A DNA stretch of 64,000 bases, taken from the sequence record NC_041973.1; one strand, 5' to 3'. Position numbers and translations under genes: made by a program. Under the pieces are notes generated by a model. That model worked only from the letters and a program-made list of their open reading frames with translations. It had not been told where the DNA came from and ran no database searches. How positions within the stretch are numbered: position 1 is the first letter of the stretch; each line of letters starts with the position of its first letter. Shown piece by piece: positions 35,008 to 37,347 of the stretch.

Positions 35008-35021
35008 AAACCTACATTATA
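35008..35021 (+). promoter_or_regulatory. class II candidate promoter
   Basis: AAACCTACATTATA upstream of 35053. Confidence 0.5.
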
Positions 35022-35052: not shown

Positions 35053-35769
35053 ATGTATGGTTTATTAATCCTCGCCTTGCCTCAGTCACCGTACGTCCAC
35101 ATGAGTGCGATGACTGCGGACAGGTTTACTGAACTGCTCCCACAACTCCAGAAAGAGCTCGATGCAGATATCTTTCCTAATGTGTGTTTCCAGGGTGCAT
35201 TCAATGTCAGTAATACCCGTACGGTCACTCAGCTGTTTATTCCGTGTAGCGGATTGGTGGCGGCGCGGGAGTTGGGGTATGAACAGATCCGCAATATTCT
35301 CGCCAACCCAGAGAAGGAAGTCCAGCATGTCACCAACATCGGTGATTGGCTGGGTATTCCTGGTAAGGTGATGTTTGATAATGCGGATGGATCTGTGGAT
35401 GAGGTCGTTGTGACTGACATGTACAAATATCTGGTACATGAAAGAAGAGAGCGCTCTGTCTTTCGGTTCAGTCCTATTGATCTTAGTATAACCGATACCG
35501 AACCATTACCAACTCACCTCTACCCACGTGATCATTTCTACGACCAGGTCTACCTCGACAAAGACGGCGAGCGTGCTTTCCTGTCTTACGGGTCGTGCGG
35601 TGAGGAAGGCTGTGTCATAGAACCCAGAGAAGAGAAACCCGTGCAAGTGTACGGCGTTACCTACTCGTCACTGGATGAAGTGGCCCGATGCTATAACCTG
35701 CCTGAGCAGTACGTGAAAGAACGCGTTGAGTCTGACAGCCTTGAATGGCTGGAGTGGTCATATTTGTAA
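35053..35769 (+). CDS. degenerate GIY-YIG (Seg-like) endonuclease family protein with NUMOD1-like C-terminus
   Basis: YGLLIL..YVHMS, R, FQGAFN, YEQ and TNIG follow GIY-YIG spacing. The C-terminus reads VQVYGVTYSSLDEVARCY. Confidence 0.5.
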   Translation: MYGLLILALPQSPYVHMSAMTADRFTELLPQLQKELDADIFPNVCFQGAFNVSNTRTVTQLFIPCSGLVAARELGYEQIRNILANPEKEVQHVTNIGDWLGIPGKVMFDNADGSVDEVVVTDMYKYLVHERRERSVFRFSPIDLSITDTEPLPTHLYPRDHFYDQVYLDKDGERAFLSYGSCGEEGCVIEPREEKPVQVYGVTYSSLDEVARCYNLPEQYVKERVESDSLEWLEWSYL

Positions 35770-35897
35770 AAGTATTTGGGGATGAGACGCAGAGCTGATT
35801 CCCATCTACGGTAAGTTGTTCAAGGAAGCAGCAAACCGGTTATAAAAAATGAAAGGGTTTTCGTAAGATAGTCAGTGCTCCGTACCCGAGACAATAC

Positions 35898-36095
35898 ATG
35901 ACCACAAACCCGCAGTTTATTTTCGTGGCTCAGAATTCTGATGCTACACACAGCGTAGAGAAACTGGAAGTAGGACGCGATACCGATACCCAGAAGAACC
36001 TCACGGAACTTCGTAAAGGTTTGCCGTTCGACTTCTCGTTTATCATGTCTGAAGAGGCGATCTATCAACTTCGACAGGCAGGGCACATCAACTAA
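35898..36095 (+). CDS. small hypothetical protein
   Basis: 65-aa ORF upstream of the DUF2829 gene. Confidence 0.55.
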   Translation: MTTNPQFIFVAQNSDATHSVEKLEVGRDTDTQKNLTELRKGLPFDFSFIMSEEAIYQLRQAGHIN

Positions 36096-36110
36096 ACTGC
36101 TGAGGTAGTC

Positions 36111-36563
36111 ATGACGAACAAATCGGAGATCTCACACGGTGGTGGTGATCAGCCTATGGAAAAAGAGCAAAGCAACTTATCCGTACTGGTGAACTACTCC
36201 ACAGGTGTGATGGAAGGTGACCGTTTTAATTACTCGGTTGCATTGGCGCTGTTGAAAGACGGCATCAAAGTGAAACGCGAAGACTGGAAGAACGCTTTCC
36301 TGGTGTTCGTCCCGGGTAGTCAGAATGTTGAACTGCCAAAAGGGTCGCCGTATGAAGTCGCACTCCACGGTAAGAAGTCCGTTGCCAATATTCGTCCGCA
36401 CATCGATCTGTACACGGAGTACGGTGAATTCGAAGTCGGTTGGACCGCCAACCAGGAAGACACCAACGCCGATGACTGGATGATTGTCTTAGACAAGAAC
36501 ACCAATCAAGACGACAGTGCCGACGAAGAGAAAGAGTCCTCAAACGACGACTCGAAGTCATAA
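36111..36563 (+). CDS. DUF2829 / Tad2-like nucleotide-signal sponge (putative anti-Thoeris/anti-CBASS)
   Basis: NYSVALALLKDGIKVKREDW..FLVF and HIDLYT..GWTANQEDTNADDWMIV match the DUF2829 pattern (F..AL..LK.G..V.R.GW ... W.PSQ.D..A.DW.IV). Confidence 0.8.
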   Translation: MTNKSEISHGGGDQPMEKEQSNLSVLVNYSTGVMEGDRFNYSVALALLKDGIKVKREDWKNAFLVFVPGSQNVELPKGSPYEVALHGKKSVANIRPHIDLYTEYGEFEVGWTANQEDTNADDWMIVLDKNTNQDDSADEEKESSNDDSKS

Positions 36564-36569
36564 ACCCCA

Positions 36570-36597
36570 GGAGAGCTTCGGCTCTCCTTTTATGCCC
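36570..36597 (+). terminator. hairpin plus TTATGCCC
   Basis: GGAGAGC-TTCG-GCTCTCC then TTTTATGCCC. Confidence 0.8.
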
Positions 36598-36612: not shown

Positions 36613-36972
36613 ATGAGTGAAAAGAAAGCGTTTGAAGTGGTATTGGATAGCCGTCATGAACCGTACGAAGCTTACCAGTTATTAGTGGCGCGTATCAATA
36701 CGTTATTACGCACCGGTCAAGGCTACCATGAAGTGAAACTCACGAAGTGGCAGCTTTACGATAACGGTCTTCTTATCAAAGGAGATGATGATGTGCATAT
36801 CTCCTTGTTGCGTCATTTCTATTACGATAAGCAACGCAATACGTTTGGTGGTGGCTTCATGGCCTTTGAGATCCTGGAAGATTTGGGTCGTTACTACAAA
36901 GTGCACGATATCACAGAAGGGATGAGCGAGAACGTTGGCCTCGTCTTCACGATCACGGTAACCACACCATAA
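36613..36972 (+). CDS. hypothetical protein, paralog array member 1
   Basis: AAGGA SD; EVKLTKWQLYDNGLLIKG. Confidence 0.7.
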   Translation: MSEKKAFEVVLDSRHEPYEAYQLLVARINTLLRTGQGYHEVKLTKWQLYDNGLLIKGDDDVHISLLRHFYYDKQRNTFGGGFMAFEILEDLGRYYKVHDITEGMSENVGLVFTITVTTP

Positions 36973-36978
36973 GAGGTT

Positions 36979-37347
36979 GTGATGAAACCACTCTTCGCCA
37001 TGAAGTTCGATACCCGGGATGCGGGATTAGGGGATCAACTCGATCTCTTGCAATCACGGGTGAAGGCTTACTCTAAACACGGCACCATGATCAAGGATGT
37101 GGCGGTGACGGCCTGGGTGGTCTGTTCGGATAACATGCCAGTTGCCGGTGATGACCCTGCTTATGTCAGTATTATCCACCGTTACCGTTACGACATCGAA
37201 CAACAGTGTGTGGTCGGTGGGGTCAGTGCCATGGATGCTCTGCGTGAGATCTGGTCGGCGTATGGTCCTGACTCTACCCTCCCGCCGTTCAGCCGGATAC
37301 CCGGTGCTGTCGATATGCAATTTACCTTAACTGTGTTCACTATTTAA
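36979..37347 (+). CDS. hypothetical protein, paralog array member 2
   Basis: GAGG SD; DVAVTAWVVCSDNMPVAG. Confidence 0.7.
   Translation: MMKPLFAMKFDTRDAGLGDQLDLLQSRVKAYSKHGTMIKDVAVTAWVVCSDNMPVAGDDPAYVSIIHRYRYDIEQQCVVGGVSAMDALREIWSAYGPDSTLPPFSRIPGAVDMQFTLTVFTI

What the first reader, a model, noticed from the sequence alone, without database searches (positions are those of the whole stretch)
36111..36563. DUF2829/Tad2-like immune-signal sponge in the accessory island
Seen: the core matches the DUF2829 pattern (ALALLKDG.KV.REDW ... W.ANQED..ADDW.IV), flanked by disordered N- and acidic C-terminal extensions. Established: SPO1 Tad2 is a DUF2829 protein that sequesters Thoeris gcADPR, and Tad2-family proteins also bind CBASS cyclic nucleotides. 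Inference: the phage nucleus shields DNA from nucleases but not from signalling-based abortive defences, so a sponge would fill that gap. The canonical PSQ.D.LA.DW is changed to ANQEDTNADDW, which may indicate a different ligand.
Basis: partly seen in the sequence, partly recalled or inferred. Interest (0 to 1): 0.65.

Follow-up and report, generated by a model that had tools for sequence, protein, structure and literature searches.

The report
Tad2-like sponge gene, jumbo phage RAY
This gene of the nucleus-forming Erwinia phage RAY really encodes a Tad2-family protein, the kind phages use to soak up bacterial immune alarm molecules, but its binding pocket is altered and it has a conserved extra N-terminal peptide and a conserved partner gene, so what it binds is unknown.

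Summary
The window is Erwinia phage vB_EamM_RAY, bases 186001-250000, and ORF 36111-36563 (+) is gp273, 150 aa, listed in GenBank as hypothetical. Residues 40-126 match Pfam PF11195 (Tad2-like) at 53 bits against a cut-off of 25. An AlphaFold2 model of the core (pLDDT above 95) matches only solved Tad2 structures. UniProt already auto-names the 99%-identical Simmy50 orthologue as Tad2-like, so the family call is not new.

New here:
- The diphosphate-clamping WNGKG loop is two residues shorter and reads WKNA. S-x-T-D has become N-x-E-D, and the HgmTad2 cyclic-dinucleotide pocket residues are absent.
- Among close relatives, the ligand helix is the fastest-changing part of the domain.
- The "disordered" N-terminal 37 residues are as constrained as the core.
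- gp273 and the 65-aa orphan gp272 form a module conserved like a core gene, between a conserved promoter-like motif and a conserved hairpin.
- Published mass spectrometry detected gp273 in RAY lysate.

Best reading, at 0.55: an early cytoplasmic oligomeric sponge for a nucleotide-derived immune signal, probably not canonical gcADPR. Another reader of this scan noted the same stretch.

The parts
35011..35019 (+). Promoter-like motif CCTACATTA behind an A/T-rich stretch, 42 nt upstream of gp271. Probably the start of the gp271-gp272-gp273 transcription unit, and probably of the early (virion RNA polymerase) class.
   Evidence: CTA[CT]ATTA occurs 24 times in the genome. Seventeen sites are intergenic, all on the same strand as the gene 36-84 nt (once 213 nt) downstream. 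A CTATATTA variant lies about 80 nt upstream of chimallin gp222. The motif is kept upstream of the gp272-gp273 pair in RAY, AH06, L009 and L007; in L007 it sits directly before gp272. It resembles the core of the AR9 early promoter AAATATATATTAT (PMC5312081). The temporal class is inferred, not measured.
35053..35769 (+). gp271, a 238-aa gene in a hypervariable slot between the vRNAP beta' subunit gene and the gp272-gp273 pair.
   Evidence: Only 17-19% identity to the gene in the same position in AH06 and L007. In IMG/VR contig L009 the slot holds an HD_4 (RelA/SpoT-type hydrolase) gene, E 5.7e-11. No Pfam family reaches its cut-off for RAY gp271.
35898..36095 (+). gp272, a 65-aa orphan protein always found 15 nt upstream of the Tad2-like gene; a candidate partner.
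   Evidence: 77-85% identical across lineages, with the C-terminal 28 residues invariant. Found only in Agricanvirus-type phages by tblastn. It belongs to phrog_11788 and has no Pfam hit. The AlphaFold2 model is poor, pLDDT 56, with two C-terminal helices.
36111..36221 (+). N-terminal extension of gp273, residues 1-37. It is predicted to be unstructured but is strongly conserved.
   Evidence: pLDDT 44-59. Only 4 of 37 columns vary among five lineages. pN/pS is 0.07-0.12. No similarity beyond the clade. No [SAG]-x-E head-protease motif.
36222..36491 (+). Tad2-like (PF11195) domain of gp273, residues 38-127.
   Evidence: Conserved family residues: A44, G51, R56, W59, H97, D99, W111, D117, D122, W123. 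Changed pocket positions: the WNGKG loop reads WKNA, S becomes N114, T becomes E116, and ML becomes T118-N119.
36492..36563 (+). Acidic C-terminal tail of gp273 (residues 128-150) and the stop codon.
   Evidence: 9 Asp/Glu against 3 Lys, pI 4.05. Length and sequence differ between relatives but the tail is always acidic. pLDDT about 60.
36570..36596 (+). GC-rich hairpin GGAGAGC-TTCG-GCTCTCC followed by TTTTATGCC. This is the probable end of the transcription unit; the TATG-containing tail may also act as a promoter for gp274.
   Evidence: Folds at -17 kcal/mol, z -2.75. Kept after the gp273 orthologue in AH06, L007 and L009, with a different stem sequence that still pairs, followed in each by TTTATGCCCATTA. 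Genome-wide, 46 of 69 TTATGCC sites are intergenic and preceded by a strong hairpin. The simple terminator scan did not list it.

Best explanation
gp273 is a Tad2-family protein made during RAY infection. Most likely it assembles into a homo-oligomer in the host cytoplasm, a tetramer by analogy with solved Tad2 proteins. There it would bind and sequester a small nucleotide-derived immune signal, so that a signalling-type abortive-infection system cannot fire while the phage DNA sits inside the chimallin nucleus. Such systems include the TIR/Thoeris-like, Pycsar and CBASS classes. The inter-protomer pocket keeps its aromatic walls and key acid (W59, W111, D117, with H97 and D99). It has lost the Asn-Gly diphosphate clamp and the Ser/Thr adenine contacts. 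The ligand is therefore probably not canonical 3'cADPR/2'cADPR bound in the canonical way. The gene is one half of a conserved two-gene module with gp272, driven by a promoter-like motif of the probable early class and closed by a hairpin.

Shown here or in the literature: the domain, the predicted fold, the residue changes, the conservation pattern, the module architecture, and that the protein is made. Inferred: oligomer formation, ligand binding, anti-defence role, early timing and cytoplasmic location.
For: Family and fold:
- PF11195 at twice the gathering score.
- The homologue profile matches all solved Tad2 proteins at 1e-22 to 1e-30.
- High-confidence model whose 24 significant PDB matches are all Tad2.
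- The near-invariant family residues are all kept, including the two Trp and the Asp that make most ligand contacts in SPO1 Tad2 and HgmTad2.
- Helix alpha1, which forms the tetramer interlock in SPO1 Tad2, is well conserved.

Prior from experiments on the family:
- 65 of 84 sponge homologues of three families (Acb2, Tad1, Tad2; 18 of them Tad2) blocked at least one signalling defence.
- Tad2 members bind 3'cADPR, His-ADPR, N7-cADPR, cUMP/cCMP or cyclic dinucleotides.

Expression and constraint:
- Peptides covering 18.7% of gp273 were found in crude RAY lysate, among roughly 40 to 45 phage proteins detected there (PMC6690015).
- Purifying selection in the core, pN/pS 0.05-0.10.

Transcription signals:
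- The same promoter-like motif precedes chimallin and this module.

Precedent: phiKZ, another nucleus-forming phage, uses the Tad1 sponge.
Against:
- The diphosphate-binding loop is two residues shorter and lacks N and G. All five structurally characterised Tad2 proteins have W-N-G.
- S becomes N114 and T becomes E116. The next two, normally hydrophobic, positions are T and N: T118 occurs in 1 of 149 homologue clusters and N119 in at most 3.
- Within the clade the ligand helix is the most variable part: 7 of 10 columns vary against 13 of 117 elsewhere, Fisher p 8e-5, and pN is five to ten times the core value. AH06 has a Pro at the adenine-contact position. This could mean relaxed constraint on the pocket.
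- The HgmTad2 cyclic-dinucleotide pocket is not conserved. R31 and N85 are both Val here, and the insertion is about 15 residues shorter.
- The text of a DefenseFinder survey of 317 E. amylovora genomes never mentions Thoeris. CBASS type I and Pycsar are named only in its correlation lists; prevalence figures were not seen. The text also does not list tad2 among Erwinia-phage anti-defence genes.
- The protein is acidic, whereas sponge pockets are usually positively charged.
- Conservation at core-gene level and a co-conserved partner are unusual for a plain sponge.
Confidence: 0.55

Rival explanations
1. Canonical anti-Thoeris Tad2. gp273 binds 1''-3'/1''-2' gcADPR in the standard inter-protomer pocket, as SPO1 Tad2 does. 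The extensions are irrelevant decoration.
For: Same domain and predicted fold. W59, W111 and D117 correspond to SPO1 W25, W73 and D79, which make most contacts. Li et al. estimated that only about 1% of Tad2 proteins are non-functional for gcADPR binding. K60, or N60 in relatives, could still contact phosphate.
Against: The N-G clamp is lost and the loop is two residues shorter. S becomes N and T becomes E, or P in AH06. The pocket helix varies among close relatives. Thoeris is not mentioned in the E. amylovora pangenome survey. The N-terminal extension is under strong selection, so it is not decoration.
Confidence: 0.2
2. The Tad2 fold has been re-used for a job other than sequestering a signal. 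gp273 would work with gp272, through its conserved N-terminal peptide and acidic tail, as a protein-binding or regulatory factor of the Agricanvirus infection cycle. The old ligand pocket would be drifting.
For: The gp272-gp273 pair is conserved at 77-85%, like the core vRNAP gene at 76-91%, while neighbours fall to 15-59%. The pair has conserved signals on both sides. The N-terminal 37 residues are as constrained as the core. The canonical ligand helix is the least constrained part. The acidic tail is kept in composition in all lineages.
Against: The invariant pocket residues W59, H97, D99, W111, Q115, D117, D122 and W123 are all retained across the clade, which argues that a pocket is still in use. 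No other function of this fold is known apart from sponge and RNA binding. The gp272 fold gave nothing and no interaction test could be run.
Confidence: 0.2
3. AcrIIA7-like RNA binder. The tetramer groove binds a structured host or CRISPR RNA, and the N-terminal extension acts as an autoinhibitory head, as in Phocaeicola dorei AcrIIA7.
For: AcrIIA7 belongs to the same family and carries an N-terminal head before the Tad2 core. It binds tracrRNA once the head is removed (PMC13133391). The profile matches the 9kzr chain at 6e-29.
Against: Of the three residues whose mutation abolishes RNA binding, K58 is kept (K49), K66 is Glu57 here, and K71 lies in the deleted loop. gp273 is acidic, pI 4.5. 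The extension is predicted unstructured rather than two long helices. E. amylovora carries type I-E CRISPR, which has no tracrRNA. A second laboratory found no Cas9 inhibition by Tad2 proteins.
Confidence: 0.05

Closest known systems
SPO1 Tad2 (gp34.65; PDB 8SME/8SMF/8SMG)
   Same: PF11195 domain and the same order of secondary-structure elements: alpha1, beta1-beta2, an insertion with alpha2, beta3-beta4, alpha3, beta5. The insertion is short, about 26 residues against 24. The equivalents of W25, W73 and D79 are kept.
   Different: SPO1 Tad2 is an 89-aa stand-alone domain; gp273 has 37 extra N-terminal and 23 extra acidic C-terminal residues. N26 is replaced and the loop is two residues shorter. 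S76 becomes N and T78 becomes E. Direct sequence similarity is weak, E 0.35.
Myroides odoratus prophage Tad2 (ModTad2/MoTad2; PDB 9EIB, 8V3E), a binder of His-ADPR and of cUMP/cCMP
   Same: Best structural matches, with target-normalised TM-scores of 0.80-0.89 and 30-32% identity. The insertion is short. The helix motif begins W-T-P/A-S/N, like gp273. It shows that one Tad2 can use two pockets and non-gcADPR ligands.
   Different: MoTad2 keeps the WNGKG loop and the hydrophobic I-L after the Asp, and has no extensions. Its ligand residues could not be mapped here.
HgmTad2 and SptTad2 (PDB 8KBI-8KBM, 8WJD), binders of gcADPR plus cGG/cGAMP
   Same: Same domain. SptTad2 is the best sequence match among solved structures.
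   Different: Their cyclic-dinucleotide pocket is built by a 41-residue insertion with R31, S47, F70 and N85. gp273 has a shorter insertion and Val at both the R31 and N85 positions.
Phocaeicola dorei AcrIIA7 (PDB 9KZR)
   Same: A Tad2 core preceded by an N-terminal extension that modulates activity; forms a tetramer.
   Different: Its head is two long helices of about 48 residues. The gp273 extension is 37 residues, unrelated in sequence and predicted unstructured. The RNA-binding lysines are not conserved.
phiKZ gp184 Tad1
   Different: Unrelated fold that forms a hexamer. It is reported as packaged in the head and injected. gp273 has no [SAG]-x-E head-protease motif in its extension, and virion association is unknown because the mass spectrometry used crude lysate.

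Membership tests
Pfam PF11195 (DUF2829 / Tad2-like domain) | Match to the family HMM above the curated gathering score | tested here: met
   53.2 bits against a cut-off of 25, E 4.6e-14, covering profile positions 2-73 of 73.
Pfam PF11195 (DUF2829 / Tad2-like domain) | Tad2 fold: an N-terminal helix, a five-stranded antiparallel sheet, and helices in the beta2-beta3 and beta4-beta5 loops | tested here: met
   AlphaFold2 core pLDDT of 95-98, with elements H41-49, E54-56, E63-67, H80-84, E91-94, E97-101, H115-119 and E123-125. All 24 significant PDB matches are Tad2 structures. This is a predicted structure, not a solved one.
Tad2 immune-signal sponges | Homotetramer with ligand pockets at protomer interfaces | not testable with these tools
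The only indirect evidence is conservation of helix alpha1.
Tad2 immune-signal sponges (gcADPR pocket) | Aromatic and acidic pocket core: SPO1 W25, W73, D79; HgmTad2 W21, W87, D93 | tested here: met
   W59, W111 and D117 are present and invariant in the clade and in 148-149 of 149 homologue clusters.
Tad2 immune-signal sponges (gcADPR pocket) | Asn-Gly diphosphate clamp in the beta1-beta2 loop (SPO1 N26; HgmTad2 N22/G23; consensus WNGKG) | tested here: not met
   gp273 reads W-K-N-A, with the loop two residues shorter. About three quarters of homologue clusters have W-N-G, and 19 of 153 have the short loop.
Tad2 immune-signal sponges (gcADPR pocket) | Ser and Thr on helix alpha3 (SPO1 S76/T78; HgmTad2 S90/T92), whose mutation together with the Asp abolishes binding | tested here: not met
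   gp273 has N114 and E116. Relatives have T/S at 114 and P/Q at 116.
HgmTad2-type cyclic-dinucleotide binding | Long beta2-beta5 insertion of about 41 residues with R31, S47, F70 and N85 | tested here: not met
   The insertion is about 26 residues. R31 and N85 align to V67 and V109.
Tad2 immune-signal sponges | Binds an immune signal and relieves a signalling defence | not testable with these tools
   Needs biochemistry and phage plating. Only production of the protein is documented.
AcrIIA7 tracrRNA binders | Basic groove residues K58, K66 and K71 required for RNA binding | tested here: not met
   The equivalents are K49 (kept), E57, and a position lost in the shortened loop. The protein has pI 4.5.

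The most novel reading that the evidence does not exclude
gp272 and gp273 form a two-protein counter-defence module specific to Agricanvirus-type nucleus-forming phages. The Tad2-like subunit would have a re-tooled pocket that captures an immune signal of Erwiniaceae not yet described. That pocket has a short beta1-beta2 loop without the Asn-Gly clamp and a fast-changing alpha3 helix. The conserved N-terminal peptide would act as a lid or as the docking site for gp272. If so, the protein could be used as bait to discover a new signalling molecule, as Tad1 and MoTad2 were.
Probability: 0.2. Interest if true: 0.7.

Novelty: new variant of a known kind. Interest (0 to 1): 0.45.

Why it matters
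A 2026 review names Tad1 of phiKZ as the only anti-defence protein described in jumbo phages. A Tad2-type protein that is made during infection of a genetically tractable nucleus-forming phage would give a second, testable case. It would show how these phages deal with cytoplasmic signalling defences that the nucleus cannot exclude.

The altered pocket makes gp273 a candidate bait for an unknown immune signal in Erwinia or Pantoea, which are plant pathogens targeted by phage biocontrol. No solved Tad2 has the short-loop pocket type, which occurs in 19 of 153 of the nearest homologue clusters. So one structure with a bound ligand would inform many proteins.

The family assignment itself is routine and already present in UniProt auto-annotation. 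The practical gain from that alone is a better annotation for 'hypothetical protein' gp273 and its orthologues.

Tried and rejected
There is therefore no oligomer test and no gp272-gp273 interaction test.
- The search for related loci with the 150-sequence alignment on genome contigs failed because no stretch was conserved enough.
I could not scan Erwinia genomes for Thoeris, CBASS or Pycsar myself and relied on a published survey.
- The look-up of sequencing runs found no RNA run, so expression timing could not be measured and read laying was not used.
- Fold of gp272: pLDDT 56, too poor for a fold search. The protein-atlas look-up for gp272 scored only 0.88 with few shared features, which is chance level.
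- Head-protease-processed, packaged sponge like phiKZ gp184: no [SAG]-x-E site in the extension, only A-D-E at residue 139 in the variable tail. This is not supported but not excluded.
- Fusion to a second sponge domain (Acb4 or Sequestin PF21825), as reported for many Tad2 proteins. Neither gp273 nor gp272 matches these, and only 2 of 150 homologues carry PF21825.
- A monophyletic 'short-loop subfamily': rejected. The trait needs 11 changes on a poorly resolved tree, and the RAY clade sits alone on a long branch.
- The supplementary tables of the 2025 sponge-diversity preprint are not held. I could not check whether a short-loop Tad2 was among the 18 tested.
- The sigma-70 promoter scan was uninformative: 2 sites against 4.1 expected.

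Full report
**Identity of the sequence.** The window is Erwinia phage vB_EamM_RAY (KU886224), bases 186001-250000. RAY is an Agricanvirus and a characterised nucleus-forming (chimallin-encoding) jumbo phage. The finding corresponds to gp273 (ANH52053), annotated 'hypothetical protein'. The ORF 36111-36563 (+) encodes 150 aa and has a GAGG ribosome-binding site 7 nt before the ATG.

**Check of the observation.**
- Pfam PF11195 (Tad2-like, formerly DUF2829) matches residues 40-126 at 53.2 bits against a cut-off of 25, E 4.6e-14, over the whole profile.
- PHROG 1048 matches at 2e-47.
- Direct sequence search of the PDB finds SptTad2 and ModTad2 at about 1e-5.
- A full HMMER scan of 1.8 billion representative proteins gave 324 relatives. 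A profile of the best 150 matches every solved Tad2/AcrIIA7 sequence at 1e-22 to 1e-30.
- AlphaFold2 with that alignment gives a confident core, residues 38-128 at pLDDT about 95-98, with low-confidence tails.
- All 24 significant Foldseek matches in the PDB are Tad2 structures, with target-normalised TM-scores of 0.67-0.89.
- In the viral structure library the first hit is the 99%-identical Simmy50 orthologue. UniProt already names it 'Thoeris anti-defense 2-like domain-containing protein'.

It is the only PF11195 match in the genome.

**The pocket.** Published structures define the gcADPR site.
- In SPO1 Tad2, W25 and W73 give van der Waals contacts. N26 and D79 give polar contacts. T78, S76, H71 and D67 contribute directly or through water.
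- In HgmTad2, the contacts are W21, N22/G23 (diphosphate), W87, L88, S90, T92 and D93. The W21A/N22A and S90A/T92A/D93A mutants lose binding.

Mapping through the profile alignment and a domain alignment of 153 sequences gives this picture for gp273:
- W59, W111 and D117 are kept, as are the near-invariant R56, H97, D99, D122 and W123.
- The consensus loop W-N-G-K-G-M reads W-K-N-A and is two residues shorter.
- S becomes N114, seen in 8 of 149 clusters. T becomes E116, seen in 13 of 149.
- The normally hydrophobic M-L after the Asp is T118-N119. T118 is seen in 1 of 149 clusters and N119 in at most 3.
- The second pocket of HgmTad2, which binds cyclic dinucleotides, depends on a 41-residue insertion and on R31, S47, F70 and N85. 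gp273 has an insertion of about 26 residues and Val at both the R31 and N85 positions.

The short loop occurs in 19 of 153 of the nearest clusters, often with a W-T-P-[ST]-Q-x-D helix. On a poorly resolved tree the trait is scattered, needing 11 changes. The RAY clade sits alone on a long branch. All five structurally characterised Tad2 proteins have W-N-G.

**Evolution within the clade.** I recovered four further lineages:
- Erwinia billingiae phage AH06.
- A 288-kb Logan contig, L007.
- A 287-kb IMG/VR contig, L009.
- P0004.

Among the 16 RAY-like records the protein is identical over residues 1-133. Synonymous divergence is almost nil for gp272-gp273, while gp271 reaches pS 0.36-0.47, which indicates a mosaic history.

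Between lineages, gp273 is 80-81% identical and the upstream 65-aa gp272 is 77-85% identical. This is comparable with the core vRNAP beta' gene at 76-91%. Flanking genes fall to 15-59%.

| Region of gp273 | pN/pS |
|---|---|
| N-terminal residues 1-37 | 0.07-0.12 |
| Core, residues 38-111 | 0.05-0.10 |
| Helix alpha3, residues 112-121 | 0.32-0.47 |

Seven of ten columns vary in the helix against 13 of 117 elsewhere, Fisher p 8e-5. Position 60 also varies (K, S or N). The invariant positions within the helix segment are Q115, D117 and A120; W111, D122 and W123 just outside it are also invariant.

Two conclusions follow. The 'disordered' N-terminal extension is a constrained, functional peptide. 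The canonical ligand helix is either diversifying or relaxed.

**Module architecture.**
- A motif aaaCCTACATTAt lies 42 nt upstream of gp271. Genome-wide, CTA[CT]ATTA has 17 intergenic, co-oriented sites 36-84 nt (once 213 nt) from a start codon. A variant lies upstream of chimallin.
- The motif is kept before the module in all four lineages. In L007 it sits after the variable slot gene, directly before gp272.
- Its core resembles the AR9 early promoter. Early timing is my inference; no RNA data exist.
- After gp273 lies a hairpin plus TTTTATGCC, at -17 kcal/mol. It is kept in all lineages with a different but still pairing stem. It is one of 46 such intergenic elements.
- The slot between the vRNAP gene and gp272 is hypervariable. 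In L009 it holds an HD_4 (RelA/SpoT-type) hydrolase gene.
- Neither gp272 nor seventeen neighbouring genes reaches any Pfam family cut-off.

**Expression.** Sharma et al. 2019 list RAY gp273 among the proteins detected by LC-MS/MS of crude RAY lysate, at 18.7% coverage (PMC6690015). The protein is therefore made. Because the sample was crude lysate (chimallin was also detected), this says nothing about packaging.

**Host context.** The text of a DefenseFinder survey of 317 E. amylovora genomes and 227 Erwinia phages never mentions Thoeris. It names CBASS type I and Pycsar only in its correlation lists; prevalence figures for them were not seen. It lists acb1, NARP1 and dam, but not tad2, among phage anti-defence genes. 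Its figures are not held. RAY-type phages also infect Pantoea. I could not scan host genomes directly.

**Interpretation.** Experiments on the family give a favourable prior:
- 65 of 84 sponge homologues of three families, 18 of them Tad2, blocked at least one of seven signalling systems.
- Tad2 members are known to bind 3'cADPR, His-ADPR, N7-cADPR, cUMP/cCMP or cyclic dinucleotides, sometimes in two pockets.
- About a quarter of tested sponges had no known target.

Given the fold, the retained pocket core, protein-level expression and the phiKZ Tad1 precedent, the best reading is an oligomeric cytoplasmic sponge for a nucleotide-derived signal (0.55). Within that reading, canonical gcADPR binding is less likely than a different ligand or binding mode.

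The rivals are:
- A canonical anti-Thoeris Tad2 (0.2).
- A re-purposed fold acting with gp272 through the conserved N-terminal peptide (0.2).
- An AcrIIA7-like RNA binder (0.05). Two of the three essential lysines are missing, the protein is acidic, and the host has no tracrRNA.

**Verdict.** This is a Tad2-domain protein with a variant pocket, a constrained extension and a conserved partner gene, in a nucleus-forming phage.

Noticed in passing
window 35011-35019; genome-wide in RAY (G000), e.g. genome positions 32744, 40044, 65904, 78641, 89621, 168906, 197019, 221012; a variant about 80 nt upstream of chimallin gp222 (genome 181696): A promoter-like motif, an A/T-rich stretch followed by C-CTA[CT]ATTA-[CT], occurs at 17 intergenic sites. 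All are co-oriented with a gene 36-84 nt (once 213 nt) downstream, and a variant precedes chimallin. It resembles the AR9 early-promoter core and may be the RAY virion-RNAP early promoter.
   Followed up: partly
window 36570-36596 and 45 other intergenic sites in the RAY genome: A recurring element: a GC-rich hairpin followed by (T)TTTATGCC. Of 69 TTATGCC sites, 46 are intergenic with a hairpin of -8 kcal/mol or stronger. It also lies between chimallin gp222 and the nvRNAP gene gp223. It could be a terminator, or a terminator plus a TATG-type late promoter.
   Followed up: partly
window 35053-35769 (gp271); L009:2126-2758; L007:3028-3678; L006:2108-2761: The slot between the vRNAP beta' gene and gp272 holds unrelated genes in each lineage, at 17-19% identity. 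In IMG/VR contig L009 it holds an HD_4 (RelA/SpoT-type hydrolase) gene, a possible alarmone or nucleotide-signal hydrolase next to the Tad2-like module.
   Followed up: partly
window 36613-37347 (gp274, gp275), continuing to 38097 (gp276, gp277): gp274 and gp275 are paralogues (both phrog_6658). They are followed by two more small genes of similar size. gp275 differs at 30 of 121 residues between RAY and MadMel although its neighbours are nearly identical, which suggests recombination mosaicism. No function is known.
   Followed up: no
window 35870-35897 and the equivalent positions in L006, L007 and L009: The leader just upstream of gp272 has no Shine-Dalgarno sequence. It carries a conserved stretch, (C)TGTACCCGAGA(T/C)AATA, in all four lineages although the surrounding intergenic sequence differs. 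It may be a translational or RNA-level control element.
   Followed up: no
window 35898-36563 compared with 35053-35769 in Mortimer, MadMel and Deimos-Minion (L003-L005): gp272-gp273 DNA is almost identical among RAY-like phages (pS 0-0.03), while the adjacent gp271 reaches pS 0.36-0.47 in two of the three phages compared. So the module has a different, more recent or more constrained history than its neighbour.
   Followed up: partly
window 36210 (Met34 of gp273): An in-frame ATG at codon 34, preceded by AGGTG, would give a 117-aa protein starting M-E-G-D-R-F-N-Y, which is exactly where stand-alone Tad2 proteins start. Selection on codons 1-37 shows that the long form is made. Whether a short form is also made is unknown.
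   Followed up: no
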